From Ylistrum balloti (taxonomy: Eukaryota): a DNA stretch of 64,000 nucleotides. The position numbers and the translations under genes were made by a program. Positions 13,786-60,785 of this stretch are shown here, piece by piece; position 1 is the first letter of the stretch, and each line of letters begins with the position of its first letter. The DNA lies in contig NW_026782462.1 in assembly GCF_031769215.1 (NCBI RefSeq), forward strand, positions 1,116,001 through 1,180,000, in the 5' to 3' direction. The notes beneath the pieces were generated by a model that searched no databases, was not told the origin of the DNA, and saw only the letters and a list, made by a program, of their open reading frames with translations.

Positions 13786-16700
13786 ATCATTCGTCTCCCT
13801 CCCTATAAAACCTAACTTATGTTTATTATCAGAGAACAATTCATCTACCTCCCTGTAAACCACGCTTCCCTGTAAACCACGACATCTATTTATCATCAGA
13901 GAACCATTCATCTACTTCCCTGTAAACCACGACATCTATTTATTATCAGGGAACCATTCATCTACCTCCCTGTAAACCACGGCATCTATTTATTATCAGA
14001 GAACCATTCGTCTACTTCCCTGTAAACCACGACATCTATTTATCATCAGAGAACCATCCGTCTACTTCCCTGTAAACCACGACATCTATTTATCATCAGA
14101 TGACAATTCATCTACTTCCATGTAAACCACGACATCTATTTATTATCAGAGAACCATCCGTCTACTTCCCTGTAAACCACGACATCTATTTATCATCAAA
14201 TGACAATTCATCTACCTCCCTGTAAACCACGGCATCTATTTATCATCAGAGAACCATTCGTCTACTTCCCTGTAAACCACGACTTCTATTTATTATCAGA
14301 GAACCATCCGTCTACTTCCCTGTAAACCACGACATCTATTTATTATCAGGGAACCATCCGTCTACTTCCCTGTAAACCACGACATCTATTTATCATCAGA
14401 GAACCATTCGTCTACTTCCCTGTAAACCACGACATCTATTTATTATCAGAGAACCATCCGTCTACTTCCCTGTAAACCACGACATCTATTTATTATCAGG
14501 GAACCATTCATCTACTTCCCTGTAAACCACGACTTCTGGTTATTATCAGAGAACCATTCGTCTACTTCCCTGTAAACCACGACATCTATTTATTATCAGA
14601 GAACCATTCGTCTACTTCCCTGTAAACCACGACATCTATTTATCATCAAATGACAATTCATCTACCTCCCTGTAAACCACGGCATCTATTTATCATCAGA
14701 GAACCATTCGTCTACTTCCCTGTAAACCACGACTTCTATTTATTATCAGAGAACCATCCGTCTACTTCCCTGTAAACCACGACATCTATTTATTATCAGA
14801 GAACCATTCGTCTACTTCCCTGTAAACCACGACATCTATTTATCATCAGAGAACCATTCGTCTACTTCCCTGTAAACCACGACATCTATTTATTATCAGA
14901 GAACCATCCGTCTACTTCCCTGTAAACCACGACATCTATTTATTATCAGGGAACCATTCATCTACTTCCCTGTAAACCACGACTTCTGGTTATTATCAGA
15001 GAACCATTCGTCTACTTCCCTGTAAACCACGACATCTATTTATTATCAGAGAACCATTCGTCTACTTCCCTGTAAACCACGACATCTATTTATCATCAAG
15101 ATGACAATTCATCTACTTCCCTGTAAACCACGACATCTATTTATCATCAAATGACAATTCATCTACCTCCCTGTAAACCACGACATCTATTTATCATCAG
15201 ATGACAATTCATCTACTTCCCTGTAAACCACGACTTCTTTTTATCATCAGATGACAATTCATCTACTTCCCTGTAAACCACGACTTCTATTTATTATCAG
15301 AGAACCATCCGTCTACTTCCCTGTAAACCACGACTTCTGTTTATCATCAGATGACAATTCATCTACTTCCCTGTAAACCACGACTTCTGGTTATTATCAG
15401 AGAACCATTCGTCTACTTCCCTGTAAACCACGACTTCTATTTATTATCAGAGAACCATCCGTCTACTTCCCTGTAAACCACGACATCTATTTATTATCAG
15501 AGAACCATTCATCTACTTCCCTGTAAACCACGACTTCTGTTTGTTATCAGAGAACCATTCGTCTACTTCCCTGTAAACCACGACTTCTGTTTATTATCAG
15601 AGAACCATTCGTCTACTTCCCTGTAAACCACGACTTCTGGTTATTATCAGAGAACCATTCGTCTACTTCCCTGTAAACCACGACTTCTGGTTATTATCAG
15701 AGAACCATTCGTCTACTTCCCTGTAAACCACGGCATCTATTTATTATCAGAGAACCATTCATCTACTTCCCTGTAAACCACGACTTCTGTTTGTTATCAG
15801 AGAACCATTCGTCTACTTCCCTGTAAACCACGGCATCTATTTATTATCAGAGAACCATTCGTCTACTTCCCTGTAAACCACGGCATCTATTTATTATCAG
15901 AGAACCATTCATCTACTTCCCTGTAAACCACGACTTCTGTTTGTTATCAGAGAACCATTCGTCTACTTCCCTGTAAACCACGACTTCTGTTTGTTATCAG
16001 AGAACCATTCGTCTACTTCCCTGTAAACCACGACTTCTGGTTATTATCAGAGAACCATTCGTCTACTTCCCTGTAAACCACGACTTCTGGTTATTATCAG
16101 AGAACCATTCGTCTACTTCCCTGTAAACCACGGCATCTATTTATTATCAGAGAACCATTCATCTACTTCCCTGTAAACCACGACTTCTGTTTGTTATCAG
16201 AGAACCATTCGTCTACTTCCCTGTAAACCACGACTTCTGGTTATTATCAGAGAACCATTCGTCTACTTCCCTGTAAACCACGGCATCTATTTATTATCAG
16301 AGAACCATTCGTCTACTTCCCTGTAAACCACGACTTCTGTTTATTATCAGAGAACCATTCATCTACCTCCCTGTAAACCACGACATCTATTTATTATCAG
16401 AGAACCATCCGTCTACTTCCCTGTAAACCACGACATCTATTTATTATCAGAGAACCATTCGTCTACTTCCCTGTAAACCACGACATCTATTTATTATCAG
16501 AGAACCATTCATCTACCTCCCTGTAAACCACGACATCTATTTATTATCAGAGAACCATTCATCTACCTCCCTGTAAACCACGACATCTATTTATCATCAA
16601 ATGACAATTCATCTACCTCCCTGTAAACCACGACATCTATTTATTATCAGAGAACCATTCGTCTACTTCCCTGTAAACCACGACATCTATTTATTATCAG

Positions 16701-17259
16701 ATGACTATTCATCTACCTCCCTGTAAACCACGACATCTATTTATTATCAGAGAACCATTCGTCTACTTCCCTGTAAACCACGACATCTATTTATTATCAG
16801 ATGACTATTCATCTACCTCCCTGTAAACCACGACATCTATTTATTATCAGGGGAGCATTCGTCTACTTCCCTGTAAACCACGACATCTATTTATCATCAG
16901 AGAACCATTCGTCTACTTCCCTGTAAACCACGACATCTATTTATCATCAGAGAACCATTCGTCTACTTCCCTGTAAACCACGACATCTATTTATCATCAG
17001 AGAACCATTCGTCTACTTCCCTGTAAACCACGACATCTATTTATCATCAGAGAACCATTCGTCTACCTCCCTGTAAACCACGACATCTATTTATTATCAG
17101 AGAACCATTCGTCTACCTCCCTGTAAACCACGACATCTATTTATCATCAGAGAACCATTCGTCTACTTCCCTGTAAACCACGACATCTATTTATTATCAG
17201 AGAACCATCCGTCTACCTCCCTGTAAACCACGACATCTATTTATTATCAGGGGAGCATT
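13786..17259. repeat. 50-bp minisatellite array (about 69 copies)
   Basis: Unit CCCTGTAAACCACGACATCTATTTATTATCAGAGAACCATTCGTCTACTT with several recurrent variants. Confidence 0.98.
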
Positions 17260-23807: not shown

Positions 23808-23940
23808 NNNNNNNNNNNNNNNNNNNNNNNNNNNNNNNNNNNNNNNNNNNNNNNNNNNNNNNNNNNNNNNNNNNNNNNNNNNNNNNNNNNNNNNNNNNNN
23901 NNNNNNNNNNNNNNNNNNNNNNNNNNNNNNNNNNNNNNNN
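23808..23940. other. Assembly gap (133 N)
   Basis: Run of N characters. Confidence 1.
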
Positions 23941-24846
23941 GGGTGAAATAGATGTGATTATCTCCCCATCTAATTTCGCGTTGAGCACTCAGTGGGTTGT
24001 TGTTAAAGTGCCTGTAAATTAATTAATACTATCTGTAAGGGTTCTGAAAGTAGTGATTCCCCATGGTCGTCTTTGTCATTGGGCAGTTCAGACCTGCACA
24101 CTCTTCAAAAACTTTTATTTTTATTTATCAACACCAATAAGTTTAGTTCAGACGTTAAAATGACTTGTCAATTAGTAAAATTGAAGATAAATACACTCTG
24201 TCCCATCTCCTCCATCACGATGGAATTAGTTCATAGATATGACGATAAATGTCAGGTAGGGGGTCTTTGTTTATAAACAGACCTGTCATCGGTTCTGTAT
24301 CGGTTATAATTTGATTACAGTATTTTTCTCCCGTTGCCTTGACGTCGGATGTTTATCGATTTTAAATTTTGAAACCATCCGGAAAATAGCCATTTTGGAA
24401 CGGCCTTCTTCCCTAGAGTTATAGTGTCTGATACCACAGGCAACAAACTGAACAACAAATCTAAATACTTCTCATAATCAAATATCACAAGCTATCTTGT
24501 AAAATAAAACCTCAATAATTTCATGAAGTTCGACTTTAAAATAAATCAACGCATTTTGTTTTGCTTAGGCATACGGAAAAACGCGGCAAGTTCAAACCCA
24601 GTGTGTAAATCGGTAGCGTGGGAGTGATCCAAACCTACATAAATATGGCTACGTGGGAGACAAGGACAATTGGTTTAGAAGGTCATTGAAAGATATAAAG
24701 ATGAAAGAGTCCATTACAGCGGTATCACGGTGATGGTCGATGTAAAGCTACACCAATGCTTGCTTATATCTGATATTTTGTCTCTTTTGCATTGTTATCG
24801 AGAACATCCGCAAAAAGAAAACAAAAAAATTGAACATTTTCTATTA

Positions 24847-25460
24847 GTTGTGTTATAAGATGAAGGTGACCGTGTAGTCATCGAAACGTCACACTAATCT
24901 TCTACTGGTTGTGTTATAAGATGAAGGTGACTGTGTAGTCACCGAAATGTCACACTCTAATCTTCTACTGGTTGTGTTAGAAGGTAAAGGTGACCGTGTA
25001 GTCATCGTCACACTCTTATCTTCTACTGGTTGTGTTACAAGAAGAAGGTGACCGTGTAGTCACCGAAACGTCACACTCTTATCTTCAACTGGTTGTGTTA
25101 TAAGATGAAGGTGGCCATGTCGTCATCAAAACGTCACACTCTGATCTTCTACTGGTTGTGTTATAAGATGAAGGTGGCCATGTCGTCATCAAAACGCCAC
25201 ATTCTAATTTTCTACTGGTTGTGTTATAAGATGAAGGTGACCGTGTAGTTATCAAAACGTCACACTCTAATCTTCTACTGGTTGTGTTATAAGATGACGG
25301 TGACCGTATAGTTATCGAAACATCACACTGTAATCTTCTACTGGATGTGTGATAAGGTGAAGGTTACCGTGTAGTCACTGAAACGTCACACTCTGATCTT
25401 CTACTGGTTGTGTTATAAGATGAAGGTGACCATGTAGTTATCGATACATCACACTCTAAT
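24847..25460 (+). repeat. 63-bp array (10 copies) built from a degenerate Penelope-type minimal hammerhead motif
   Basis: Consensus GGTTGTGTTATAAGATGAAGGTGACCGTGTAGTCACCGAAACGTCACACTCTAATCTTCTACT. It contains GATGA-A, the stem GGTGAC/GTCACC, GAAACGTC and a GTGT/ACAC pairing. The array is certain and the HHR origin is an inference. Confidence 0.85.
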
Positions 25461-26556: not shown

Positions 26557-27719
26557 TTCTGGCGAAATGTTTTACCAAATAAAGACATTGACTTTACACA
26601 CCGCATAACCTGCATAAGATCATTTATCTAAGGTCCTGGCGAAATGTTTTACCAATTAAAGACATTGACTTTACACACTGTATAACCTGTGTGAGATCAT
26701 TTATCTACAGCCCTGGTGAAATGTTTACCAGATGAAGAGTTATACACACCGTATAACCTGTGTGAGATCATTTATCTACAGCCCTGGTGAAATGTTTACC
26801 AGATAAAGAGCTATACACACCGTATAACCTGTGTGAGATCATTTATCTACAGCCCTGGTGAAATGTTTACCAGATAAAGAGTTATACACACCGTATAACC
26901 TATGTGAGATCATTTATCTACAGTCCTGGTGAAATGTTTTACCAGATAAAGAGTTATACACACCGTATAACCTGTGTGAGATCATTTATCTACAGTCCTG
27001 GTGAAATGTTTACCAGATAAAGAGTTATACACACCGTATAACCTATGTGAGATCATTTATCTACAGTCCTGGTGAAATGTTTTACCAGATAAAGAGTTAT
27101 ACACACCGTATAACCTGTGTGAGATCATTTATCTACAGTCCTGGTGAAATGTTTTACCAGATAAAGAGTTATACACACCGTATAACCTGTGTGAGATCAT
27201 TTATCTACAGTCCTGGTGAAATGTTTACCAGATAAAGAGTTATACACACCGTATAACCTATGTGAGATCATTTATCTACAGTCCTGGTGAAATGTTTTAC
27301 CAGATAAAGAGTTATACACACCGTATAACCTGTGTGAGATCATTTATCTACAGTCCTGGTGAAATGTTTTACCAGATAAAGAGTTATACACACCGTATAA
27401 CCTGTATGAGATCATTTATCAAGGTCCTGGTGAAATGTTTTACTAGATAAAGAGTTATACACACCGTATAACCTGTGTGAGATCATTTATCAAGGTCCTG
27501 GTGAAATGTTTTACTAGATAAAGAGTTATACACACCGTATAACCTGTGTGAGATCATTTATCTACAGTCCTGGTGAAATGTTTTACTAGATAAAGATAAA
27601 GACTTACACACACCGTATAACCTGTGTGAAATCATTTATCTACAGTCCTGGTGAAATGTTTTACTAGATAAAGATAAAGACTTACACACACCGTGTAACC
27701 TGTGTGAGATCATTCATCT
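26557..27719. repeat. 71-72-bp minisatellite array (about 16 copies) with internal inverted repeats
   Basis: Unit CTGGTGAAATGTTTTACCAGATAAAGAGTTATACACACCGTATAACCTGTGTGAGATCATTTATCTACAGTC. Confidence 0.97.
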
Positions 27720-28245: not shown

Positions 28246-29087
28246 TGCCTGGTCTGATTATGTGGTACAACTGTATCTACTGCCTGGTCTGATTCTGTGG
28301 TACAACTGTATCTACTGCCTTGTCTGATTCTGTGGTACAACTGTATCTACTGCCTTGTCTGATTCTGTGGTACAACTGTATCTACTGCCTGGTCTGATTC
28401 TGTGGTACAACTGTATCTACTGCCTGGTCTGATTATGTGGTACAACTGTATCTACTGCCTGGTCTGATTATGTGGTACAACTGTATCTACTGCCTTGTCT
28501 GATTCTGTGGTACAACTGTATCTACTGCCTTGTCTGATTCTGTGGTACAACTGTATCTACTGCCTGGTCTGATTATGTGGTACAACTGTATCTACTGCCT
28601 GGTCTGATTATGTGGTACAACTGTATCTACTGCCTGGTCTGATTATGTGGTACAACTGTATCTACTGCCTTGTCTGATTCTGTGGTACAACTGTATCTAC
28701 TGCCTGGTCTGATTATGTGGTACAACTGTATCTACTGCCTGGTCTGATTATGTGGTACAACTGTATCTACTGCCTGGTCTGATTATGTGGTACAACTGTA
28801 TCTACTGCCTGGTCTGATTATGTGGTACAACTGTATCTACTGCCTTGTCTGATTCTGTGGTACAAATGTAACTACTGCCTTGTCTGATTCTGTGGTACAA
28901 CTGTATCTACTGCCTGGTCTGATTCTGTGGTACAACTGTATCTACTGCCTTGTCTGATTCTGTGGTACAATTGTATCTACTGCCTGGTCTGGTTCTGTGG
29001 TACAACTGTATCTACTGCCTTGTCTGATTCTGTGGTACAAATGTAACTACTGCCTGGTCTGGTTTTGTGGTACAACTGTATCTACTG
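28246..29087. repeat. 35-bp minisatellite array (24 copies)
   Basis: Unit TGCCTGGTCTGATTATGTGGTACAACTGTATCTAC with G/T and A/C variants. Confidence 0.98.
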
Positions 29088-34132: not shown

Positions 34133-36174
34133 AATGTACACAGATGTTCCATGTAAACAATGCACACAGATGTCACGTGTAAACAGTGGACACAAATGTC
34201 CAATGTAGTGTAAAGAGATGTACCATGTAAACAGTGTACACTGATATCTAATGCAAACAGTGTACAAAGATGTCCCATGTAAACAGTGGACACCGATGTC
34301 TCATGTAAACAGTGGACACAAATGTCCCGTGTAAACATTGTACACAGATATCCCTTGTAAATAGTGTACACAGATGTCCCGTGTAAACAGTGTACACAGA
34401 TGTTCCATGTAAACACTGGACACAGATGTCTTATAAAAAACGCTGTACACATATGTCCCATGTAAACAGTGTACATATATGTCCCATGTAAACACTGGAC
34501 ACAGATGTCTTATAAAAAACACTGTACACATATGTCCCATGTAAACAGTGTACACAAATGCTCCATGTAAACAGTGTACACATATGTCCCATGTAAACAG
34601 TGTACAAAGACGTCCCATGTAAATAGATGTACACATAAGTCCCATGTAAGCAGTGTACACAGATGTCATATGTAAACAGTGTACACAGATGTCCCATGTA
34701 AACAGTGTACACAGATGTCATATGTAAACAGTGTACACAGATGTCCCATGTATACAGTGAACACAGATGTCCGATGTAAACAGTGTACACAGATGCCCCA
34801 TGTAAACAGTGTACACATATGTCCCATGTAAACAGTGTGCAAATATGTCCCATGTAAACAGTGTAAACATATGTCATATGTAAACAGTGTACACAGATGT
34901 CCAATGTAAGCAGTGTACACAGATGTCATATGTAAACAGTGTACACAGATGTCCCATGTATATGTGAACACAACTGTAAACAGTGTACACAGATGTCCCA
35001 TGTAAACAGTGTACACAGATGTCCCATGTAAACAGTGTACACAGATGTCATATGTAAACAGTGTACACAGATGTCCCATGTATACAGTGAACACAAATGT
35101 CCCATGTGTACACAATGCCCCATGTAAACAGTGTACACATATGTCCCATGTAAACAGTGTGCCCATGTAAACAGTGTAAACATATGTCATATGTAAACAG
35201 TGTACACAGATGTCCAATGTAAGCAGTGTACACAGATGTCATATGTAAACAGTGTACACAGATGTCCCATGTATACAGTGAACACAGATGTCCGATGTAA
35301 ACAGTGTACACAGATGTCCCATGTAAACAGTGTACACAAATGCCCCATGTAAACAGTGTACACATATGTCCCATGTAAACAGTGTACATATATGTCCCAT
35401 GTAAACAGTGTACACAAATGCCCCATGTAAACAGTGTACACATATGTCCCATGTAAACAGTGTACACAGATGTCCCGTGTAAACAGTGTACACATATGTC
35501 CCATGTAAACAGTGTACACAAATGCCCCATGTAAACAGTGTACACATATGTCCCATGTAAACAGTGTGCAAATATGTCCCATGTAAACAGATGTACACAT
35601 AAGTCCCATGTAAACAGTGTAAACAGATGTCCCATGTAAACAGTGGACACAGATGTCCGATGTAAACAGTGTACACAGATGTCCCATGTAAACAGTGTAC
35701 AAAGATGCCCCATGTAAACAGTGGACACAGATGTCGTATGTAAACAGTGAACACAGATGTCCGATGTAAACAGTGTACACAGATGTCCCTTGTAAACAAT
35801 GTACACAAATGTCTCATGTAAACAGTGTACACAGATGTCCCTTGTTAACAATGTACACATATGTCCCATGTAAACAGTGTACACAGATGTCCCGTGTAAA
35901 CAGTGTACACAGATGTCCCATGTAAACACTGGACACAGGTGTCTTATAAAAAACACTGTACACATATGTACCATGTAAACAGTGTCCACAGTTATCCCAT
36001 GTAAACAGTGTACACAGATGTACACAGATATCCCATGTAATCAGTGGACACAGATGTCATATGTAAACGATGTACACAGATGTACAGAGATGTCCCGTGT
36101 AAACAGTGGAAACAAATATCCCATGTAAACATTGTACACAGATATCCCATGTAAACAGTGTACACAGATGTTCC
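34133..36174. repeat. 26-bp minisatellite array (about 78 copies)
   Basis: Unit CATGTAAACAGTGTACACAGATGTCC, containing the palindrome GTGTACAC. Confidence 0.97.
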
Positions 36175-37136
36175 CTTTTAAACGAAAGTGACCGGATATC
36201 CCATGCTGACAATGTTAACATTGAAAGCAGATGTCTGTCCCAAGTTAACAAAAAGTGTACACACATTTTTGTTGTATGTACAGAAAGTGTGCCCAGGCGT
36301 TCATCTGATGACAAAAGTGTACATAAATGTCTTATGACAAGATCAATTTTACAGAAATTTGTCTTAAATATTTATGAAATAGCATTGTGATGAGACCATC
36401 CAAGACAAAGCGCGGGTTCTACTGAAAACCTTTTACATAAAACCAGCTTTACTTCAATTAGAGGTCTGTTTTTATCCGTATACCGGAGATTACATCATGA
36501 AAACATTCATGACCTGATCTCCAGTATATTTATAAAAAATAAACATACCATCCGCATTCTTGACTAATTTGAGTCTAAAAGTGTTGTAATTTTCATAATA
36601 TCAATGAAATTTAACAAAAACAAAGACCTGTACAGTTTTGTTGGAAACGTCCGCTCAAGTTTGTCTTAGCCAATCAAAACGTTTCTTTCAACCACAGATG
36701 ATACCACATAATTTTGTCAAGGAATTGAGCCTAATAGCATGTGCAAATGCCGGGAAAATACAGAGACAGTACTACTGACAAAAGAATCCAACCGCTCACT
36801 CGGAGAGATAGAATTAAAATGTACCGAAGTACTAGGGACAAAAAAGAAACCCGCAAGACAGAAAGTTTCATCTAATATAACAACCTCGTCAAAGTCCGTC
36901 AAGTGTCCCATGTCCAGTCCGTAGCTGACCACAACTCACGTACAGCACACATACATACGTACAAAGCGCAAACAACGAAACGCACTCGCGCTATACCCGG
37001 CATATGTACGGGTATACATGGACAGGTAAAACGTAACGCGAGTTTTACGAACAACATACAAGTAATTGAAAAACAACTAATTCAGTAATGTTGACCCCGT
37101 TACTGTTAAAATCCTTCTTTTTATTGATCACTGTAG

Positions 37137-37985: not shown

Positions 37986-39035
37986 GAAGTGAGCAGAACA
38001 CCCGAGACAAAATCGTGCTTTCAAGTATTAGACAAATTGCTATTCCCGGACAGATCCGAATAAGAAAGAGGATTAGTGATAGAAAATCATCGTTTCTTAT
38101 ACGCCATATCATACTCTAGGAGAATGATTGTATTGTGTGATAAAGGGCAAAATATAGCAGATCGTTATATACTCCTCGATCGTTTGATAAAATTCAAAGG
38201 TGACTTACAAATTGTAACACATGAAAGGAAACATGCAAAGAATATAATTTGTGCGCATATTTTACTGTCAATCGTAGATAAGATCCTCTATTTTGATCTA
38301 CTACATACAAGTACAATATCTTAGTGTTCTCTATAATAGGTTTTGTCCTTCTTTAGCATATGTACGAATTACATTGTATCCAGGAATTCACTGTTAGAGC
38401 CTCGAGTCTCTCGATCTGGAAAAGGCTATTGAGACTGACGGGGTCTGCGCTTCAGTGACGACAACACTTGCGGACGTAAAGGCAAGAGTTGTTTACAAAA
38501 TTGAGTACCCTCCAGACGTCCATTGCTAAGCATATTCTGTCCAATTGCAACGAATCACAAAGCTATTCAGAGGCTTCATATATTGTTCTAAGGTAGAGTT
38601 GTACCATTGTACAACCGTTTGTACCTACGCGATTTTAGCTTTTGTCAGTCCCTAACAATTAGACATATATATTTGGCTATATAAGATATATGCCTATGGT
38701 ATATCTGTATACAGATCATTCAGGAAGTGAAAATGGTAGGCCGAATTAGCAATAAATTAAAGGAATCCTTACGAAGTGTTAAGCATCGTACGCTGTCGAC
38801 GTGTAATTCAACCCATGTCAATATTAACCTTGCTTGAAATAAGATTGAAAGGTAAATCGTACGTCAAGTTAGGACATGTAGGACATGAAGAATGTAAGCA
38901 GACAAGGCTAGATACTACACATATGAAGATAGACCAAATAAAGGACTCGCGAAGATTGTACACGAGACACAATAGTAAACAGCACAGTACAGATTTAGCG
39001 TTAGATACAGAAGAGCTAAACAATGAATTAAACTG

Positions 39036-39094
39036 CATCATACAACTATTTCGTCCTTCTAGGACTCGTCAGTGATGTTACATCATACAGTTGT
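39036..39094 (-). ncRNA. Hammerhead ribozyme with complete catalytic core (type I fold 39036-39077, type III fold 39042-39094)
   Basis: RNA: ACAACUG-UA-UGAUG-UAA-CAUCA-CUGACGA-GUCC-UAGAA-GGAC-GAAA-UAGUUGU-A-UGAUG. CUGANGA, GAAA, the GUA triplet and G10.1-C11.1 are all present, and stems I and II are perfect. Confidence 0.88.
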
Positions 39095-39348
39095 TTTGTC
39101 CTTCTAGGACTTGTCAGTGATGTTACATCATACAGCTGTCTAGTCCTTCTAGGACTTGTCAGTGATGTTACATCATACAGCTGTATAGTAATTCTAGGAC
39201 TTGTCAGTATTGTTACATTATACAGATCTATAGTCATTCTAGGAATTGCCAGTGATGTTACATCATACAGCTGTTTTGTCCTTTTTAGGACATGTCAGTG
39301 ATGTTACATCATACAGTTGTTTCGTCCTTCTAGACTTCGTTAGTGAAG
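39036..39348 (-). repeat. 45-bp tandem array of hammerhead motifs (7 units)
   Basis: Units start at 39036, 39081, 39126, 39171, 39216, 39261 and 39307. Minus-strand consensus: CATCA CTGAC(G/A)A GTCC TAGAA GGAC (G/A)AAA CA(G/A)CTG TA TGATG TAA. Confidence 0.95.
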
Positions 39349-40837
39349 TTAAGGGTTTCGTAAATTTCGTAATGTTCACCTACCTGGTGGAAGAACGTCA
39401 CAAGCCTAAAGAGTTGAGAAAGTGATACCTGTAAATTTAATAATTGTTATGAATGTATACATTCTAATAATATTGTATATTCTGGTACCACCATGTGTAT
39501 GTTTATCGTGTGCAAATAAAGATTATATATGGTCGTCTAACTTCCAATTCACGATATAGTTAGTGAAAAGTTACATGTACACCGACTTGTGAACGCCTTT
39601 CCGGGTTTCTACCTGCTTAAGAACGTCACGTTTACATACCGAACGTCTGATATACAGTGAAACATATTGAAATATTTATATGCAATGGCTGACTATATTG
39701 TAGTATAACATCGCTCCACTGCGTACGATATCAAAATTTATGTCTTGAATTTGAGTTTGGATCATGATTATGTTGACGTATTGGCATTTTCTTGTTGGTT
39801 TTTGCTTAAGGTTATGTCGCACATCTGCCACCAACGGTCACTTGTTCGGCGTCTATATTTGGGAAACACAGTGGAGCATTATGTTCTTAGGTGTGTAGAC
39901 ATTAAAATATTGTATATAATAATTTTTTGTCATCCTCTGTCTGTGTCGACTGGAGCTGAGGTAGATACAAGCTACATTAACAACTGTGTAAAACGGTATC
40001 TTATATATGTTCATATATTGATTATTATAGGACCATTGCAGTCGCCTGCCTTATCAAACCCGGTCGTATGCCAGAGCAGCACTATTACAGTATATACGCA
40101 ATGTTATTTTAGAATATAACCGTTGTGTATGTTTGATCAGCCTGGCTATTGTCTCCTGCTAGAGTAAAATTGGCACATTCACTCCATAATATGCTCGCTA
40201 GGAGCCTGACCATTCCATGCTCCGGTACATATATTGGTTTCAGCGTACCTCGGCGTTGTATTTATGGTACACATACACGCTCCGTCTACATCATTGTCGG
40301 TATGAAATTGTGTCATTATTTTTACCTAATGTCCAAGTTTACCTTAATGTACGACTTGATGAAGTGAATTCGGAATGGAATGCATCCATGCAGAAATACA
40401 AATATGTTTTGTTACAAATAAATATCGCAGCTTAATGCTTGCAATTGGGTGTAAACATAGCTTTTAAAGTGGGAATGGCCGTTTATTGTCCATCCTCACA
40501 AAACAATTTGTCTCCATTTGCGTTGAGGTAGATGTAGATGTAAACTTTGAGTAAATATCATTTGCCGCGATGTACTCCGAATGAAACATTAAGCGATATG
40601 TTGATAGTTATAATATTGTACACTTCATGACGTCATTTTGAAGCTCTATCGTTGATTAGAAAATAACCCCAAAGAACAATTCAGCATTTACATTTCACAT
40701 TAGTGTACAAAGAACAGAATTTGCCTCACTAGAAATATATCTATGAATCCCCTGAGTTTACCATCGATCTTCTATGTATGCTTGTAAAAGTAATCTTTTC
40801 TGTCTCAATCTCGCCTTGTTTATTCTTTGTTGGTAAC

Positions 40838-41228
40838 CTCTGTTGTTAGCAGTAAATATTTACAGTCCAGGTCACGATTTATCTACCCTGTGTTGTTTAC
40901 AGTAAACATTTACAGTCTTGGCGACGACTTATCTATCCTCTGTTGTTAACAGTAAACTTTTACAGTCTAGGTCACGACTTATCTACCCTCTGTTGTTTAC
41001 AGTAAACATTTACAGTCTAGGTCACGACTTATCTACCCTCTGCTGTTAACAGTAAATATTTACAGTCTAAGTCACGACTTATCTACCCTCTGCTGTTAAC
41101 AGTAAATATTTACAGTCTAGGTCACGACTTGTCTACCCTCTGTTGTTAACAGTAAATATTTACAGTCTAAGTCACGACTTTTCTACCCTCTGTTGTTAAC
41201 AGTAAATATTTACAGTCAAAATCACGAC
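40838..41228. repeat. 50-bp minisatellite array (about 7.6 copies)
   Basis: Unit CTCTGTTGTTAACAGTAAATATTTACAGTCTAGGTCACGACTTATCTACC. Confidence 0.95.
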
Positions 41229-50200: not shown

Positions 50201-53110
50201 CCTAGTTACCGCCATTTCTACATTTGTATTGAGAGTAGCTAAGTGAAGGTATACCTAGCGGTTATGAGAATGTGAATATATTGGGTAGTGGTCAAGTTAT
50301 TATGAGAACATCACACGCTTGCATGGACTAGAATTCACATCGCGGGTGTCGTCGTTGAAGTTGATGAATAAAAAGACGTTTATCCTTCCGGAACTCTAAT
50401 AATCCTTGTATCTACGTGATCCTATTTTGACCATATTCTATCAATTGTTATTGTTTTTCACACCAGGGTAAGTCTTACGTATTAAGAGTTTTTTAACACA
50501 AGTGAAAGTCTTACGTAACAAGAGTTTGTTTGTTTCGAAAGTGTTTTTGAAGTATTTATAAAAAGTGTTTGTCTGATTGATGTATGGAGTATTTGGGTAG
50601 ATATCACTCTATGTGCCTTTGATGGTAACATCTTTGTAAATTTAGCGACTTTGTAGTTTTCTGAGGTAATGTAAGTATGTTTTAATGATAATGTCAATGA
50701 CAAGTGATAACGTCAGGTTGTCTCGGTGATTTCTTGTCTCTTTTTATGTTGTATGAGTATTTTTATTTTTACATTATTTAATTTTCTATTCAATTATTGT
50801 CGATATAGCTATAACATTTCCAGATAACGTGAAGCACGTACCTGCTGTATGATACATGTGTGACATTTCATCAGTCTTCTGTTTACAATTTTAAAAACTC
50901 GTCCCTCTGATTTCACTCACCGGCTTTCAGACTGCCTCCATAGCAATTTCATGGAGAATACTTACACCATGCATGTTACATAATTATGTCACTTGAGTAT
51001 TAAATTCAGAATCATATTATTGATCGCTTTTCTCCTTTGCCATGAAATGTTCAAAAACAATCCCCATTATTAAATTGAAAATTGGTTATGTTCGACAATT
51101 GGAAACGAGCATGAATCCATCACACCAGACATGGTATGAGATCTACATGTAAACTACGACTAGGCATCTTTAGCTGTATACTAGGTATGTTTAGGAATCG
51201 TCTCCGTTTTTTCTAGTGGTAATTTAACCTTTCCCAGAATTGTTGATCATTCCTTGGTATTTTGGTTACCGCCTTAATTATTCTTTCTAAACATACGAGT
51301 ATCCGAAAGCACTCTACGTCATACACATTACTCATGGTAGACAATGCCAAGTTATGTAGAATTTGTGCCATGCAATGCACTCTGCAATCCTATATAACAG
51401 AATGTGCAAACCAAATTATACTGCAAGACTAACCTTGCCTTTCTCATAAATAACTTTCTTGTTGCTTGCTATTTTTAAGCATTCAATCCGATTTTAATGT
51501 TCTCGCCGACAGTGTAGCTATTTTAACGAAAGCCAAAGTTTACTTAGTTGAAATCTTCTGTCCTATGCAAGCAGAAAGGTGATAATGAGACCAATCAATG
51601 ACAGCTAATCAAAACTGCAATTGTAAGTAAGTTTAAACAAAAACAAGGGGATATCTTTAGAATGCATGATGACATTGTGTGGTATCATTTAGCATTATAA
51701 GGCCTCATACCAGACTGTTCTATACGACTCTCCAGCACCCGTCGAGACTTCCTCTAATATAAGAAAACCTCACTGCAATCCTATTTAGAAATAGCGTGTT
51801 AGTTTTGACCCGGTGTTATTACGTGCGACCATGACTATGTAACACAGCTATATTCTCAGACTTCAAGACGGACTCTAGTGGACGCAGAGCGATTTTGAAT
51901 TCATATCGACTGGAACAGACCGATTTAGTATACAGCTATCGTACTGCCTGTGTTCTAGTAACACTTCGGTCTTCCTGACTATAGGATCCCTACATCCGCC
52001 ATGCCATGTGCTTCTGTAGATCGTCGACAGTGTACATAAAAACTGAAATAATACTCGGATTCTGGGTATCACATTGTCACCATCAGTGACGAAATACTAT
52101 GTACCGCAATGTAATCTACATCAACACAATTCTCGTTAAGTGGATGTTTCTACACATGGTATCGAAGTGACGGGAAGGACACTACCTCTTATCCTATCGA
52201 TGTGAGTATAACAAAGATCGAATATCGTAGATATTCCTGCCTTTTAACATTTTTCATGTTGTTCTGTTGGAAGCAAATCATGAATGGTTTGTGTACTTAA
52301 TGCCTGTATGCATGTCTATTCTATAGTGGTCTTCTCCTGCCTGTGTAATGTTTCATAGCATTCCCGGTGCAGAAAGATGTTGGCTTATGTACATCGGTTT
52401 GACGCCTTATACTGCAGAGATGACGTAAATTATAAGCTCGGGTTATTCAAAACAAACTTCAAATTTTTTGAGGCTACAGTGTAATTTGTGTGCTTGAAGA
52501 GAGTTAACTTTGTAAGAGAGTATTACGAGCTTTAACATATAGGCTGTGTTAAAACAAGTATTATGTCACAATGTATTTCACATATACAAGCAATTACAAA
52601 CAAAATGTCATGGAAAATGTATGAAAATGCACAAATAATGTTTGCTGACTAATACAAAGTCTTTATTGACATATACATAAACAATTTTAACTGAGAATCT
52701 TTTTTATAAAATCCTAAAATTTCATGTGAAATGGAAAGATGTATTCTTTTTCACATAAGTAAAAGAAGTTAAATGTTGACAGAGTTTGAAGGAAAAACGT
52801 TGAGAACAGTATCAAAACGAAGAAATCATTATGTTGCACCATTTGTCCAAATCATGGCATCAAAAATATTTCTGACTGGAAACAATGAAAGCCGCTTCAG
52901 GTTATAATACGGTAGTGGCAAATTCACTGGATGAGAAGCGAATTATGTGATACTAACTTTCAAGTGTTTGTTGATGTATACAAGATATATAGAAAAGTGT
53001 TACACAAACGCAAAATATCAAGGTGATTATTTGTTTACATATACAAAGCACTTATTGATGAGACTCACAAAATAAAAAAGAAACGTTTCTTGACATATTC
53101 AGAATATTAA

Positions 53111-56100
53111 CAGAAGTGTTTGTTGACACATACATGGTATAAGACAAATGTTTGTTGACACATACATGATATCAGAGAAGTGTTTGTTGACACATACATG
53201 GTATAAGAGAAGTGTTTGTTGACACATACATGGTATAAGAGAAGTGTTTGTTGACACATACATGGTATAAGAGAAGTGTTTGTTGACACATACATGGTAT
53301 AAGAGAAATGTTTGTTGACACATAAATGATATAGGAGAAATGATAGTTGACACATATATGATATAAGAGAAGTGTTTGTTGACACATACATGATATAAGA
53401 GAAATATTTGTTGACACATACATGATATAAGAGAAGTGTTGGTTGACACATACATGATATAAGAGACGTGTTAGTTGACACATACATTATATAAGTGTTT
53501 GTTGACACATACATGATATAAGAAAAATTGTTTGATGACACATACATGGTATAAGAGAAGTGTTTGTTGACACATACATGGTATAAGAGAAATATTTGTT
53601 GACACATACATGATATAAGAGAAGTGTTTGTTGACACATACATGATATAAGAGAAATGTTTGTTGACACATACATGATATAAGACAAGTGTTAGTTGACA
53701 CATACATGATATAAGAGAAGTGTTAGTTGACACATACATGATATAAGAGAAATATTTGTTGACACATACATGATGTAAGAGAAGTGTTAGTTGACACATA
53801 CATGATATAAGAGAAGTGTTAGTTGACACATACATGATATAAGAGAAATATTTGTTGACACATACATGATGTAAGAGAAGTGATAGTTGACACATACATG
53901 ATATAAGAGAAGTGTTTGTTGACACATATATGGTATACGAGAAATGTTTGTTGACACATACATGGTATAAGAGAAGTGTTTGTTGACACATACATGATAT
54001 AAGAGAAGTGTTTGTTGACACATACATGTATACGAGAAGTGTTTGTTGACACATACATTATATAAGAGAAGTGTTTGTTGACACTTACATGATATAAGTG
54101 TTTGTTCACACATACGTGATATAAGAGAAATGTTTGATGACACATACATGATATAAGAGAAGTGTTTGTTGACACATACATGATATAAGAGAAGTGTTTG
54201 TTGACACATACATGATATAAGAGAAGTGTTTGTTGACACATACATGATATAAGAGAAGTGTTTGTTGACACATACATGATATAAGAGAAATATTTGTTGA
54301 CACATACATGATAAATGAGAAATATTTGTTGACACATACATGATATAAGAGACGTGTTAGTTGACACATACATGATATAAGTGTTTGTTGACACATACAT
54401 GATATAAGCTTGTTGACACATACATGATATAAGTGTTTGTTGAAGCATACATGATATAAGAGAAATGTCTGTTAGATTTGACACATACATGATATAAGAG
54501 AAGTGTTTGTTGACACATACATGGTATAAGAGAAGTGTTTGTTGACACATACATGATATAAGAGAAGTGTTTGTTGACACATACATGATATAAGAGAAGT
54601 GTTTGTTGACACATACATGGTATAAGAGAAGTGTTTGTTGACACATACATGATATAAGAGAAATATTTGTTGACACATACATGATAAAAGAGAAATGTTT
54701 GATGACACATACATGATATAAGAGAAGTGTTTGTTGACACATACATGGTATAAGAGAAGTGTTTGTTGACAAATACATGATATAAGAAAAGTATTAGTTG
54801 ACACATACATGATATAAGAGAAGTGTTTGTTGACACATACATGGTATAAGAGAAGTGTTTGTTGACACATACATGGTATAAGAGAAGTGTTTGTTGACAC
54901 ATACATGATATAAGACACATACATGATATAAGAGAAGTGTTTGTTGACACTTACATGATATAAGTGTTTGTTGACACATACATGATATAAGAGAAGTGAT
55001 AGTTGACACATACATGATATAAGAGAAATATTTGTTGACACATACATGATATAAGAGAAGTGTTTGTTGACACATACATGATATAAGTGTTTGTTGACAC
55101 ATACATGATATAAGAGAAGTGTTTGTTGACACATACATGATATAAGAGAAATATTTGTTGACACATACATGATATAAGAGAAGTGTTTGTTGACACATAC
55201 ATGATATAAGAGAAATATTTGTTGACACATACATGATATAAGAGAAGTGTTTATTGACACATACATGATATAAGAGAGAAATGTTTGTTGACACATACAT
55301 GATATAAGAGAAGTGTTTGTTGACACATACATGATATAAAGAGTGTTTGTTGACACATGTTTGTTGACACATACATGATATAAGAGAAATGTTTGTTGAC
55401 ACATACATGATATAATGACACATACATGATATAAGTGTTTGTTGACACATACATGATATAAGTGTTGGTTGACACATACATGATGTAAGAGAAGTGTTTG
55501 TTGACACATACATGATATAAGTGTTTGTTGAAGCATACATGATATAAGAGAAATGTCTGTTGACACACACGTGTTAAGAGAAATATTTGTTGACACATAC
55601 ATGATAAATGAGAAATATTTGTTGACACATACATGATAAAAGAGAAATATTTCTTGATACATACATGATATAAGAGACGTGTTAGTTGACACATACATGA
55701 TATAAGAGAAGTGCTTGTTGACACATACATGATAAAAGAGAAATGTTTGTTGACACATACAAGATATAAGAGAAATATTTGTTGAACATACATGATGTAA
55801 GAGAAGTGTTAGTTGACACATACATGATATAAGGGAAATGTTTGTTGACACATACATGACGTAAGTGTTTGTACACACATACATTATATAAGAGAAGTGT
55901 TTGTTGACACTTACATGATATAAGTGTTTGTTGACACATACATGATGTAAGAGAAGTGTTTGTTGACACATACATGATATAAGTGTTTGTTGAAGCATAC
56001 ATGATATAAGAGAAATGTCTGTTGACACACACGTGATATAAGAGAAATGTTTGTTGACACAAACATGATAAAAGAGAAATAATTGTTGACACATACATGA

Positions 56101-56512
56101 TAAAGGAAAAGTGTTTGTTGACACATACATGATATTAAAGAAGTGTTAGTTGACACATACATGATATAAGAGAAGTGTTTGTTGACACATACATGATAAA
56201 AGAGAAATGTTTGTTGACACATACAAGATATAAGAGAAATATTTGTTGAACATACATGATATAAGAGAATTGTTTGTTGACACATACATGGTATAAGAGA
56301 AGTTTTTGTTGACACATACATGATATAAGTGTTTGTTGACACATACATGATATAAGTGTTTGTTGACACATACATGATGTAAGAGAAGTGTTTGTTGACA
56401 CATACATGATATAAGTGTTTGTTGAAACATACATGATATAAGTGTTTGTTGACACATACATGGTGTAAGTGTTTGTTGATACATACATGGAATAGGTGAA
56501 GTGTTTGATAAC
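53111..56512. repeat. 32-bp minisatellite array with 27-bp deletion variants (over 100 copies)
   Basis: Unit GAGAAGTGTTTGTTGACACATACATGATATAA. Confidence 0.98.
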
Positions 56513-58714: not shown

Positions 58715-60304
58715 CTACACAAACAATGGTAAGGAGTGACACTTACACACGGGAGTATATAACAGACCAGGCTATATCTGATACAGGTACACAGACAATG
58801 GACAGGTGTGACACTTACACACGGAAGTATATAACATATCAGGCTATATCTCATACAGGTACACAGACAATGGACAGGTGTGACACTTACACATGGGAGT
58901 ATATAACAGACCAGTCTGTACCTGATACAGGTACACAAACAATGGACAGGTGTGACACTTAAACACGGGAGTATATAACAGATCAGGCTATATCTCATAC
59001 AGGTACACAGACAATGGACAGGTGTGACACTTACACACGGGAGTATATAACAGCTCACTCTGTACCTGATACAGGTACACAAACAATGGACAGGTGTGGC
59101 ACTTACACACGGGAGTATATAACAGCTCACTCTGTACCTGATACAGGTACACAAACAATGGACAGGTGTGACACTTACACACGGGAGTATATAACAGCTC
59201 ACTCTGTACCTGATACAGGTACACAAACAATGGACAGGTGTGACACTTACACACGGGAGTATATAACAGCTCACTCTGTACCTGATACAGGTACACAAAC
59301 AATGGACAGGTGTGACACTTACACACGGGAGTATATAACAGCTCACTCTGTACCTGATACAGGTACACAAACAATGGACAGGTGTGACACTTACACACGG
59401 GAGTATATAACAGCTCACTCTGTACCTGATACAGGTACACAAACAATGGACACGTGTGACACTTACACACGGGAGTATATAACAGATCAGGTTATATCTG
59501 ATATGGGTACACAAACAATGGACAGGTGAGACACTTACACACGGGAGTATATAACAGCTCACTCTGTACCTGATACAGGTACACAAACAATGGACAGGTG
59601 TGACACTTACACACGGGATTATATAACAGATCAGGCCATACCTGATACAGGTACACAAACAATGGACAGGTGTGACACTTACACACGGGAGTATATAACA
59701 GATTAGTCTGTACCTGATACAGGTACACAAACAATGGACAGGTGTGACACTTACACAGGGGAGTATATAACAGATCAGGCCATACCTGATACAGGTACAC
59801 AAACAATGGACAGGTGTGACACTTACACACGGTATATATAACAGATTAGTCTGTACCTGATACAGGTACACAAACAATGGACAGGTGTGACACTTACACT
59901 CGGGAGTATATAACATATCAGTCTATATCTCATACAGGTACACAAACAATGGACAGGTGAGAGAGACACTTATACACGGGAGCATATAACAGATCAGGTC
60001 ATACCTGATACAGGTACATAAACAATGGACAGGTGTCACACTTACACACGGGAGAATATAACAGCTCACTCTGTACCTGATACAGGTACACAAACAATGG
60101 ATAGGTGTGACACTTACACACGGGAGTATATAACAGATCAGGTTATATCTGATACAGGTACACAAACAATGGACAGTGTGACACCTACACACAGTAGTAT
60201 ATAATAGATCAGGCTATATCTGATACAGGTACACAAACAATGGACAGGTGTGTCACTTACACCCCTGGGTATATAACAGATCAGGCTACATCTGATACAG
60301 GTAC
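58715..60304. repeat. 72-bp minisatellite array (about 22 copies)
   Basis: Unit GTACACAAACAATGGACAGGTGTGACACTTACACACGGGAGTATATAACAGCTCACTCTGTACCTGATACAG. Confidence 0.98.
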
Positions 60305-60785
60305 TCAACACAAAGATGTATGGCTTGAACTGGAAACATACCTAGTTAAACCCTGGTATATATTGAAACTAAAATATCCATTCCCAGACATACTCTTAAG
60401 TAATTTCTAGATTTACATCAACCGCGACAGAAACGCATATATATACGATAAAACAACATCTCGTTTTCCAGAACTTTGAGGTGTGATCGATGATGGCAGA
60501 ATAAAAAGTGTTATAAACATTGGATGGTTTATTCTAGGAATTCAGGTGATTAGATGATATAGCCAGTGTTGAAAATTTGACTGGGGAAGATGACTAGTAT
60601 TGTGAGGTTAAGTCAGAGCGTCTGTCAATTAAAGAATATTTTCAATGTTTATGGATGGAAACACAATGGCAACTAAAGTAGATAACCGGTGTTTAAACGG
60701 TCGGCCTTAAGCAAACATCGAAACTGTTCTTAGAATTTAGCGGTATAGACATACGTAGAATTGACTCAATGTATTATTTACTTAC

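What the first reader, a model, noticed from the sequence alone, without database searches (positions are those of the whole stretch)
39042..39094. Tandem duplication turns a minimal type I hammerhead into a fully paired type III hammerhead
Seen: on the minus strand the unit2/unit1 junction reads ACAACUG-UA-UGAUG-UAA-CAUCA-CUGACGA-GUCC-UAGAA-GGAC-GAAA-UAGUUGU. Stem I is UGAUG/CAUCA with a UAA loop, and stem II is GUCC/GGAC with a UAGAA loop. Stem III is ACAACUGU paired with AUAGUUGU, 8 bp with one G-U. The two neighbours deviate from the family palindrome CAGCUG in complementary ways (CAACUG and UAGUUG), so they pair better with each other than with themselves. Established: CUGANGA, GAAA and an NUH triplet define the HHR core, and minimal type I HHRs with short palindromic stem III in animal retrozymes and Penelope-like elements cleave best as dimers. 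Inference: this junction is a catalytically competent HHR cleaving after GUA between 39086 and 39085, produced by circular permutation through tandem duplication. U15.2-G16.2 replaces the usual C-G and may slow it.
Basis: partly seen in the sequence, partly recalled or inferred. Interest (0 to 1): 0.9.

Follow-up and report, generated by a model that had tools for sequence, protein, structure and literature searches.

The report
Junction hammerhead ribozyme in 45-nt satellite
The last two units of a seven-copy, 45-base DNA repeat together spell a complete, well-paired self-cutting hammerhead RNA. This is the built-in geometry of a repeat made of nothing but hammerheads, the other copies are dead, and cutting has not been tested.

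Summary
Observation confirmed. Minus strand 39094-39042 reads exactly as described. It has all invariant hammerhead core bases, a 5-bp helix I with a UAA loop, a 4-bp helix II, and an 8-bp helix III (7 Watson-Crick pairs and one G-U) made from the ends of two neighbouring 45-nt units.

Rfam Hammerhead_3 scores it 45.4 bits (cut-off 48.5; E 1e-6 for the window). The type I reading of the same core scores 22.6 bits, and folds at -3.5 against -13.0 kcal/mol.

Interpretation partly supported.
- The type III fold is not special to this junction. It follows from a satellite whose whole unit is a hammerhead with a palindromic helix III, which is a cis form of the long-known double hammerhead.
- Five of the six full units are dead, with G8 changed to A and G12 lost. 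They share these lesions, so dead units were amplified at the DNA level.
- The "complementary deviations" come down to one covarying pair (neutral expectation 2-8%).
- Predicted folding in the native context is unstable, because a flank sequence competes for the helix III strand.
- No Penelope-like ORF lies nearby.

The scan's notes, which I did not check, report the same 45-nt arrays and the same junction reading on other pieces of this genome. Cleavage is untested.

The parts
39036..39351 (-). The 7 x 45-nt minisatellite whose unit is one whole hammerhead. It runs from loop 1 through the 3' strand of helix I, the core, helix II, GAA, palindromic helix III and A17 to the 5' strand of helix I. 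It is exactly seven units (45+46+5x45 = 316 nt).
   Evidence: TRF period 45, 7.0 copies, 84% matches. Units in register. Flanks show no significant similarity to the unit.
39042..39094 (-). Junction (type III) hammerhead formed by the end of unit 5 and all of unit 6. It is the only copy with an intact core.
   Evidence: Rfam RF00008 scores 45.4 bits, E 9.5e-9 locally and 1e-6 over the window. The minimum-free-energy and centroid fold of the 53-mer is the type III hammerhead.
39087..39094 (-). Helix III strand 16.8-16.1 (ACAACUGU), the tail of dead unit 5.
39086..39086 (-). A17. The predicted cleavage is 3' of this base, between 39086 and 39085.
   Evidence: Position in the Rfam alignment and the hammerhead numbering convention (PMC3088659).
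39073..39085 (-). Helix I hairpin UGAUG-UAA-CAUCA, 5 bp with a triloop. This is the same architecture as the Rfam type III consensus.
39066..39072 (-). Core C3-A9, CUGACGA. It holds the C7-G8 CpG that all interior units have lost.
39053..39065 (-). Helix II, GUCC-UAGAA-GGAC.
39042..39052 (-). G12-A13-A14 followed by helix III strand 15.1-15.8 (AUAGUUGU).
39036..39041 (-). The second A17 (39041) and the terminal UGAUG, which lets the same core be read as a minimal type I hammerhead (39078-39035).
   Evidence: Rfam RF00163 scores 22.6 bits (cut-off 34). The fold energy is -3.5 kcal/mol.
39031..39038 (-). AUGCAGUU, spanning the array edge and the flank. It can pair with 39092-39085 and sequester the helix III 16.x strand and the cleavage site.
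   Evidence: With this flank included the minimum free energy is -17.5 against -13.0 kcal/mol for the hammerhead fold, and P(helix III) falls to 0.00-0.01 for transcripts ending at 39032-39030.
39086..39311 (-). Five complete but dead units, u1 to u5. All have G8 changed to A. G12 is A in u1 and u5 and U in u2 to u4. u2 and u3 carry further lesions.
39312..39351 (-). The first unit, u0, which lacks an upstream 5' strand for helix I. G5 is changed to A and helix II is damaged. It keeps both CpGs and carries the same ACAACUGU variant as u5.

Best explanation
This is the 3'-terminal junction of a decaying 7 x 45-nt minisatellite. Its repeat unit is nothing but a canonical-style animal hammerhead: helix II GUCC/GGAC, and helix III A-C, AGCU, G-U, palindromic. 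The few-hundred-nucleotide body of an ordinary ribozyme repeat is reduced here to a UAA triloop.

In such an array each core has two ways to close helix III. It can close on itself (2 bp plus a tetraloop, type I, weak). Or it can pair with the identical palindrome at the end of the preceding unit (8 bp, type III). The second way is the classical double hammerhead made intramolecular and compact.

At this locus only the last core is intact. If the minus strand is transcribed, the expected event is one cut after A39086, probably slow. The reasons to expect slowness are the U-G pair at 15.2/16.2, the short loops, and the competing folds.

Shown here: the sequence, the fold of the isolated 53-mer, the covariance-model scores, the decay pattern and the array boundaries. 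Inferred: cleavage, transcription, and the history of the array.

The array itself grew by ordinary DNA-level repeat expansion of units that were already inactive. The intact edge unit is therefore most likely a survivor that escaped CpG decay and homogenisation, not a ribozyme kept by selection.
For: - The unit is a complete hammerhead, and the type III reading scores 45.4 bits against 22.6 for the type I reading.
- Fold energies are -13.0 (type III) against -3.5 kcal/mol (type I). The 53-mer's minimum-free-energy fold is the type III hammerhead.
- The helix III consensus ACAGCUGU is self-complementary, so any two neighbours pair at 8/8.
- All five interior units share G8 to A at a CpG. u2 to u4 share G12 to U and u1 and u5 share G12 to A. 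u4 and u5 differ at only 3 positions. This means dead units were duplicated.
- The edge units u0 and u6 alone keep both CpGs, as expected for array edges that homogenise less.
- u6 carries 2 changes from the inferred unit, against 3 for u4 and u5, so it is not unusually conserved.
- Window CpG observed/expected is 0.77 and TpG+CpA is 1.28, consistent with CpG decay.
- The window is packed with unrelated minisatellites, so DNA-level repeat formation is rife here.
- The same helix II and helix III module occurs as a true type I hammerhead in 565-569-nt tandem repeats in lake metagenomes.
- The dimer principle is established in the literature (PMC4209133, PMC3088659, PMC6765202, PMC7229834).
Against: - Helix III stays fully paired despite three substitutions, which happens in 2-8% of neutral simulations. 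This could mean some selection on the junction fold.
- Both changes in u6 fall in distal helix III and none in the core or helices I and II.
- Notes from the scan, which I did not check, report many such arrays, some mostly intact. That leaves room for an RNA-level life cycle of the family that one decayed locus cannot reveal.
- I have no transcription or cleavage data.
- Only seven units were available, so descent among the units is inferred from few characters.
Confidence: 0.6

Rival explanations
1. The junction is a selected, catalytically competent type III ribozyme. The two neighbouring units acquired complementary changes in helix III because cleavage at 39086/39085 matters to the element or the host.
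For: Helix III has 7 Watson-Crick pairs plus 1 G-U despite 1+2 substitutions. The partners pair worse with themselves (6+0 and 4+4). The neutral expectation for staying fully paired is 2-8% at a transition bias of 1-4. The core and helices I and II of u6 are untouched. Another note of the scan (s1-254184, not checked) reports junction-complementing mutations in a second array.
Against: This is a single covarying pair, noticed after the fact. With transitions only the expectation rises to 23%. ACAACUGU is also the tail of u0, so it is an inherited variant and not a local response. A two-sided G-C to A-U change also sits in helix I of dead unit u3. The partner unit u5 and all other interior units are dead, and dead units were amplified. 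The native-context folds disfavour the active structure.
Confidence: 0.15
2. Ultra-minimal retrozyme. The 45-nt family propagates through RNA. Junction hammerheads cut multimeric transcripts into 45-nt monomers, a tRNA ligase circularises them, and a reverse transcriptase of the Penelope type copies them by rolling circle into new arrays. This locus would be an old insertion.
For: Cutting at successive junctions would release exactly one unit. Animal ribozyme repeats are proposed to spread this way (PMC7229834, PMC7761336). The scan's notes, not checked by me, list many dispersed 45-nt arrays in this genome.
Against: The array is an exact integer number of units with sharp edges. I saw no target-site duplication by eye. 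No reverse transcriptase or endonuclease domains turned up in ORFs of 62 aa or more within about 10 kb. Dead units were the ones amplified. Known retrozyme RNAs are 170-400 nt (PMC7229834). An earlier follow-up on another array of this family concluded DNA-level expansion (not independent evidence).
Confidence: 0.1
3. Type III first. The ancestor was a single type III hammerhead whose two helix III strands, being the same 8-nt palindrome, are also direct repeats 37 nt apart. Replication slippage between them created the 45-nt array, and the type I reading is the by-product.
For: ACAGCUGU equals its own reverse complement, so the two arms of a type III helix are direct repeats. Helix I (5 bp plus a triloop) matches the Rfam type III consensus architecture, and the type III score is near the cut-off.
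Against: The array begins at loop 1 and ends with the 5' strand of helix I. So the duplicated segment holds a whole type I motif but not a whole type III motif. The helix II and helix III module is that of type I hammerheads in long animal-style tandem repeats. Eukaryotic repeat-associated hammerheads are overwhelmingly type I (PMC3088659).
Confidence: 0.1
4. Inert relic. The sequence never acts as a ribozyme, either because the minus strand is not transcribed or because the RNA misfolds, and the motif is only a fossil.
For: The predicted probability of the junction helix III is 0.00-0.21 in most native contexts. A flank competitor is 4.5 kcal/mol better. Only 1 of 7 cores is intact. Minimal hammerheads with a short helix III cleave poorly in vitro even as dimers (PMC4209133).
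Against: Energy models ignore hammerhead tertiary contacts and co-transcriptional folding. Some contexts give P up to 0.64. All sequence requirements for activity are met.
Confidence: 0.3

Closest known systems
Double (dimeric) hammerheads of newt satellite 2, avocado sunblotch viroid, Aedes/Nematostella repeats and Penelope-like elements
   Same: Helix III is weak and short, with a palindromic loop. Two copies pair their palindromes into one long helix III, which gives the active fold. Tandem arrangement is the enabling condition (PMC4209133 Fig. 1A; PMC3088659 Fig. S8; PMC6765202).
   Different: In those cases the two copies lie hundreds of nucleotides apart, or in separate molecules, and helix I stays open. 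Here the spacer is a 3-nt loop. One core plus the neighbour's palindrome is therefore a self-contained 53-nt type III motif, and only one of the two cores is alive.
Metazoan non-LTR retrozymes (tandem repeats with type I hammerheads)
   Same: Tandem repeats in an AT-rich animal-type genome. The hammerhead has a 4-bp helix II (GUCC/GGAC) and helix III A-C, AGCU, G-U. The same module occurs in the 565-nt repeats L001-L003 (PMC7229834).
   Different: The monomer is 45 nt against about 170-400 nt, so there is no body. Only 1 of 7 units is intact. There is no evidence of circular RNA.
Minimal hammerheads in pseudo-LTRs of Penelope-like elements
   Same: Small hammerheads occurring in tandem, thought to act through dimers (PMC4209133, PMC7761336).
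   Different: Those hammerheads have a helix II of 6-8 bp with a bulged base and little or no helix III, and they flank a reverse transcriptase/GIY-YIG ORF. Here helix II is 4 bp with no bulge, and no such ORF lies within about 10 kb.
Type III hammerheads of viroids, satellite RNAs and plant LTR retrozymes (Rfam RF00008)
   Same: Open helix III, and helices I and II closed by small loops. Helix I is 5 bp plus a triloop, as in the family consensus. The score is 45.4 bits.
   Different: The score is below the curated cut-off of 48.5. Loop 2 is 3 nt shorter than the consensus. The context is an animal-type minisatellite. Helix III is built from two copies of one palindrome.
Permutation-by-duplication model for enzymes, suggested for ribozymes
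   Same: Tandem duplication of a motif creates a circularly permuted copy across the junction. Eckert et al. 2023 (PMC10085705, Discussion) mention this as a possible route between hammerhead types.
   Different: That is a model. Here both readings coexist in one natural array, but the direction of change and the activity are unproven.

Membership tests
Hammerhead ribozyme (any type) | Invariant core C3 U4 G5 A6 N7 G8 A9, G12 A13 A14, the A15.1-U16.1 pair, and H17 | tested here: met
   CUGACGA at 39072-39066, GAA at 39052-39050, A39049 paired with U39087, and A17 at 39086. The criteria are those listed in PMC3088659.
Hammerhead ribozyme (any type) | Three helices around the core, with no mispair next to the core (1.1-2.1, 10.1-11.1, 15.1-16.1) | tested here: met
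   U-A, G-C and A-U respectively. Helices I, II and III have 5, 4 and 8 bp. The minimum-free-energy and centroid fold of the 53-mer is this structure.
Hammerhead ribozyme (any type) | Rfam covariance-model score at or above the curated gathering cut-off | tested here: not met
   RF00008 scores 45.4 against 48.5, and RF00163 scores 22.6 against 34. As a calibration, well-formed type I hammerheads in 565-nt tandem repeats (L003) also score only 28-30 against 34, so the cut-off is conservative.
Hammerhead ribozyme (any type) | Site-specific, Mg2+-dependent self-cleavage giving 5'-OH and 2',3'-cyclic phosphate ends | not testable with these tools
   This needs in vitro transcription and end mapping.
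Hammerhead ribozyme (any type) | Loop 1 to loop 2 tertiary contact that gives fast cleavage at physiological Mg2+ | not testable with these tools
   The loops are UAA and UAGAA. Loop 2 is 3 nt shorter than the RF00008 consensus. No 3D tool for RNA was available.
Type III topology | Helix III open, helices I and II closed by loops, on one contiguous strand | tested here: met
   39094-39042.
Type I topology (minimal, palindromic helix III) | Helix I open, and helix III closed by a short palindromic loop | tested here: inconclusive
   The strands are present at 39078-39035. But helix III is A-U plus U-G with the loop AGUU, which is no longer palindromic. The fold energy is -3.5 kcal/mol and the score 22.6 bits. 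The array consensus, A-C, AGCU, G-U, does fit.
Metazoan non-LTR retrozyme | Tandem repeat monomer of about 170-400 nt carrying one type I hammerhead | tested here: not met
   The monomer is 45 nt. The size range is from PMC7229834.
Metazoan non-LTR retrozyme | An intact hammerhead in every unit (the definition of an active element in 10.64898/2026.07.22.740005) | tested here: not met
   1 of 7 units is intact.
Metazoan non-LTR retrozyme | Expression as linear and circular monomer RNAs | not testable with these tools
   No transcriptome data were available.
Penelope-like element pseudo-LTR hammerhead | Lies in a repeat flanking a reverse transcriptase plus GIY-YIG ORF | tested here: not met
   No Pfam family at or above its cut-off in 25 ORFs of 62-325 aa between 29.8 and 50.7 kb. 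The long ORFs at 34-36 kb are a 26-bp repeat. Short or badly decayed remnants could escape this test.
Penelope-like element pseudo-LTR hammerhead | Helix II of 6-8 bp with an unpaired base after A9, and helix III absent or 1 bp | tested here: not met
   Helix II is 4 bp with no bulge, and the helix III consensus is 2 bp plus a tetraloop. The descriptor is from PMC4209133.

The most novel reading that the evidence does not exclude
The 45-nt hammerhead-only repeat family, of which this locus is a decayed member, is the smallest self-processing mobile RNA yet seen. Junction (type III) hammerheads would cut array transcripts into exact 45-nt monomers, which are circularised and copied back into DNA by rolling-circle reverse transcription. 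At the same time the arrays would be a living intermediate of permutation by duplication between type I and type III hammerheads.
Probability: 0.1. Interest if true: 0.8.

Novelty: new variant of a known kind. Interest (0 to 1): 0.4.

Why it matters
The hammerhead types are circular permutations of one fold, and how one type turns into another in nature is not documented. A tandem array whose unit is only a hammerhead shows both readings on the same DNA. The junction reading is much the stronger one, which makes the duplication route concrete and testable at the bench.

It also pushes the known size range of ribozyme-bearing animal repeats (about 170-400 nt) down to 45 nt. I found no description of this in the searchable literature.

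For this particular locus the practical meaning is small. There is one surviving core in a decaying satellite, in a region full of other minisatellites.

Tried and rejected
- **Penelope-like element context.** I scanned 25 ORFs within about 10 kb against Pfam and found no reverse transcriptase or GIY-YIG domain. The big ORFs elsewhere in the window are minisatellite artefacts.
- **Flanks as part of a repeated element.** BLAST of 2.5 kb on each side against the window found only a neighbouring 50-bp array and short chance hits. The scan's sequence index gave nothing, and a blank there means nothing.
- **Hidden degenerate units beyond the array.** Local alignment of both flanks to a double unit was no better than shuffles (170/500 and 105/500). 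An apparent 63% copy in the repeat finder is therefore not supported.
- **Exact copies elsewhere.** The 29-nt core pattern gave 0 hits in metagenome and viral contigs. A looser pattern gave 0 in prokaryotic genomes and three lake-metagenome loci that are type I hammerheads in about 565-nt repeats.
- **Other hammerheads in the window.** Rfam at E up to 1 and a relaxed core scan find none outside this array.
- **Lünse et al. 2017 on dimeric Penelope hammerheads.** The library does not hold this paper. I cite it only through PMC6765202.
- **Equilibrium folding as a test of activity.** The results swing between 0 and 0.64 with the choice of transcript ends, so I treat them as a caveat and not a verdict.

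Full report
**What is there.** On the minus strand, 39351-39036 is a tandem array of period 45 with 7.0 copies and 84% matches. In register, each unit has these parts:
- UGAUG-UAA-CAUCA, the helix I hairpin
- CUGACGA, core positions 3-9
- GUCC-UAGAA-GGAC, the helix II hairpin
- GAA, positions 12-14
- an 8-nt segment whose consensus ACAGCUGU is its own reverse complement
- A17

The unit is therefore nothing but a hammerhead. No spacer or body lies between one ribozyme and the next. The array is exactly seven units (316 nt) in the phase that starts at loop 1 and ends with UGAUG. The flanks on both sides resemble the unit no more than shuffled sequence does.

**Check of the observation.**
- Helix III between 39094-39087 and 39049-39042 has seven Watson-Crick pairs and one U-G pair at 15.2/16.2.
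- The complete core pattern occurs once in 64 kb, against none in 100 shuffles. A relaxed core scan finds no other credible hammerhead in the window.
- Rfam Hammerhead_3 aligns end to end at 39093-39043 with 45.4 bits. That is E 9.5e-9 for the local search and 1e-6 for the whole window, but below the curated cut-off of 48.5. This is why the default search returned nothing.
- As a calibration, clean type I hammerheads in 565-nt tandem repeats from lake metagenomes score 28-30 bits against a cut-off of 34. Falling just under a cut-off is therefore not strong negative evidence.
- The isolated 53-mer folds into the type III hammerhead as both its minimum-free-energy and centroid structure: -13.2 kcal/mol, frequency 0.35, z -2.2.

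**Type III against type I.** The same core can also be read as a type I motif (39078-39035), because the array ends with a spare UGAUG. That reading scores 22.6 bits (cut-off 34). Its fold is worth -3.5 kcal/mol, against -13.0 for the junction fold.

**Why this is not special to this junction.** The helix III segment is a palindrome, so any two neighbouring units can pair 8/8.
- Unit 4 has a perfect junction helix and still scores 29.4 bits with a dead core.
- Pairing two copies' palindromic helix III and loop 3 into one long helix is the classical double hammerhead. It has been described for newt and viroid RNAs, for Aedes and Nematostella repeats, for amphibian retrozymes and for Penelope-like elements (PMC4209133 Fig. 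1A and Results; PMC3088659 Fig. S8; PMC7229834; PMC6765202).
- The difference here is that the distance between copies has shrunk to a 3-nt loop. One core plus its neighbour's palindrome then becomes a contiguous type III motif.
- Eckert et al. mention duplication as a possible route to circular permutation of ribozymes (PMC10085705, Discussion). This array illustrates that idea. The edge phase of the array, which holds a whole type I motif but not a whole type III motif, fits a type I starting point.
- The same helix II and helix III module (GUCC...GGAC, then GAAAC-AGCU-GUA) occurs as a true type I hammerhead in 565-569-nt repeats elsewhere. This also points to type I ancestry.

**State of the array.** Only the last unit (39085-39041) is intact.
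- Units 1 to 5 all read CUGACAA or a variant, with G8 changed to A at the C7-G8 CpG.
- G12 is A in u1 and u5 and U in u2, u3 and u4. u2 and u3 carry further damage.
- The first unit has G5 changed to A and a damaged helix II.
- These lesions are shared in nested fashion, and u4 and u5 differ at only three positions. Inactive units were therefore the ones copied, so the array expanded as DNA and not under selection for cleavage.
- The two edge units alone retain both CpGs, as expected if array edges take less part in homogenisation.
- The window shows moderate CpG depletion: observed/expected 0.77, with TpG+CpA at 1.28.
- The intact unit carries two substitutions, against three in u4 and u5, so it is not conspicuously conserved.
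- The window is crowded with unrelated minisatellites of 26-86 bp, so local repeat expansion is common here.

**The complementary deviations.** The upstream strand has G16.5 changed to A. The downstream strand has C15.5 changed to U and C15.2 changed to U.
- The first two changes form an A-U pair. The third gives U-G.
- Against the consensus, the downstream strand would still pair at all eight positions (6+2). The upstream change therefore turns a wobble into a Watson-Crick pair and does not rescue a mismatch.
- In simulations with one and two random changes, helix III stays fully paired in 2.3%, 4.0% and 7.6% of trials at transition bias 1, 2 and 4. With transitions only the figure is 23%.
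- The ACAACUGU variant also ends the first unit of the array, so it is inherited variation.
- Helix I of dead unit u3 shows a two-sided G-C to A-U change.
- Together this is a hint, not evidence of selection.

**Would it cleave?** All sequence requirements used to accept hammerheads are met (PMC3088659 Methods). There are three caveats:
1. U-G stands in place of C-G at 15.2/16.2.
2. The loops are short, and their capacity for tertiary contact cannot be assessed here.
3. Misfolding is predicted.
   - Once 39038-39031 (AUGCAGUU) is transcribed it can pair with 39092-39085. The resulting fold is 4.5 kcal/mol better than the hammerhead.
   - In transcripts starting at 39094, the probability of the junction helix drops from 0.97 to 0.01 or less between 3' ends 39036 and 39032.
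   - With longer 5' ends the probability varies from 0.00 to 0.64.
   - These equilibrium numbers ignore tertiary stabilisation and folding order, so they are a warning, not a verdict.

Related minimal hammerheads cleave poorly in vitro even as dimers (PMC4209133).

**Context.**
- No Pfam domain was found in 25 ORFs of 62-325 aa between 29.8 and 50.7 kb, so there is no Penelope-like element beside the array.
- The flanks are unique within the window.
- Nothing here shows transcription of the minus strand.

**Earlier notes of the scan.** These are AI notes and I did not check them.
- They report many 45-nt hammerhead-only arrays on other pieces of this genome, up to about 105 copies, and the same junction type III reading.
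- Two follow-ups describe other arrays as far more compact than published ribozyme repeats. One concludes DNA-level expansion inside a dispersed element.
- I could not inspect those loci. My conclusion on DNA-level expansion rests.

**Literature.** Searches for a hammerhead-only minisatellite, or for type III hammerheads in animal satellites, found nothing describing a 45-nt unit. Published animal ribozyme repeats are about 150-450 nt (PMC7229834, PMC7761336).

**Verdict.** The structural reading is sound and a neat illustration of permutation by duplication. But the mechanism is the known dimer principle in compact form, this locus is a decayed copy with one surviving core, selection on the junction is not shown, and activity is untested. 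I class it as a new variant of a known kind, with moderate interest. The family as a whole, rather than this locus, is what deserves the bench work.

Noticed in passing
window 1-64000: The window is crowded with unrelated minisatellites:
- 72 bp x32 at 1-2306
- 27 bp x39 at 7110-8155
- 50 bp x68 at 13865-17250
- 71 bp x16 at 26559-27719
- 35 bp x24 at 28246-29087
- 26 bp x about 80 at 34135-36183
- 32 bp x109 at 53085-56507
- 72 bp x22 at 58716-60313

The long ORFs in these stretches are repeat artefacts with no convincing Pfam hits.
   Followed up: partly
window 24839-25460 (+): A 63-bp x10 array resembles a Penelope-type minimal hammerhead: a bulged A, a 6-bp helix II GGUGAC/GUCACC, then GAAAC-GUC. 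But it reads AAGAUGA where CUGAUGA is required, and it gives no Rfam hammerhead hit at E up to 1.
   Followed up: partly
window 10970-11030 (-): A hammerhead-like remnant...CGACGAGUCCCAGAGGAACGAACCAGCUGUA..., shares the CAGCUGUA palindrome with the 45-nt unit. Its core is imperfect and it gives no Rfam hit at E up to 1.
   Followed up: no
window 40837-41228: A separate 50-bp x about 8 array lies 1.5 kb upstream of the hammerhead array on the minus strand. I saw no hammerhead core in its unit.
   Followed up: no
L001:1964-1995, L002:145-745, L003:28-1754: Lake-metagenome contigs carry type I hammerheads with the same helix II and helix III module (GUCC..GGAC, then GAAAC-AGCU-GUA) in 565-569-nt tandem repeats. 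These look like retrozyme-type repeats of an unidentified eukaryote. Hammerhead_1 scores 28-30 bits in L003, below the cut-off of 34.
   Followed up: partly
window 39176-39220 (-): Dead unit u3 has a two-sided G-C to A-U change at helix I positions 1.2/2.2, next to an A-A mismatch at 1.3/2.3. Compensatory-looking changes therefore also occur in units that cannot cleave.
   Followed up: yes
window 39380-39410 and 39620-39650 (-): The short motif GUGACGUUCUU ... CAGGUAG occurs twice, about 240 nt apart, upstream of the array. This may be chance or a small duplication. The repeat finder did not report it.
   Followed up: no
window 23808-23940: A single run of 133 N, far from the finding. I left it untouched.
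   Followed up: no
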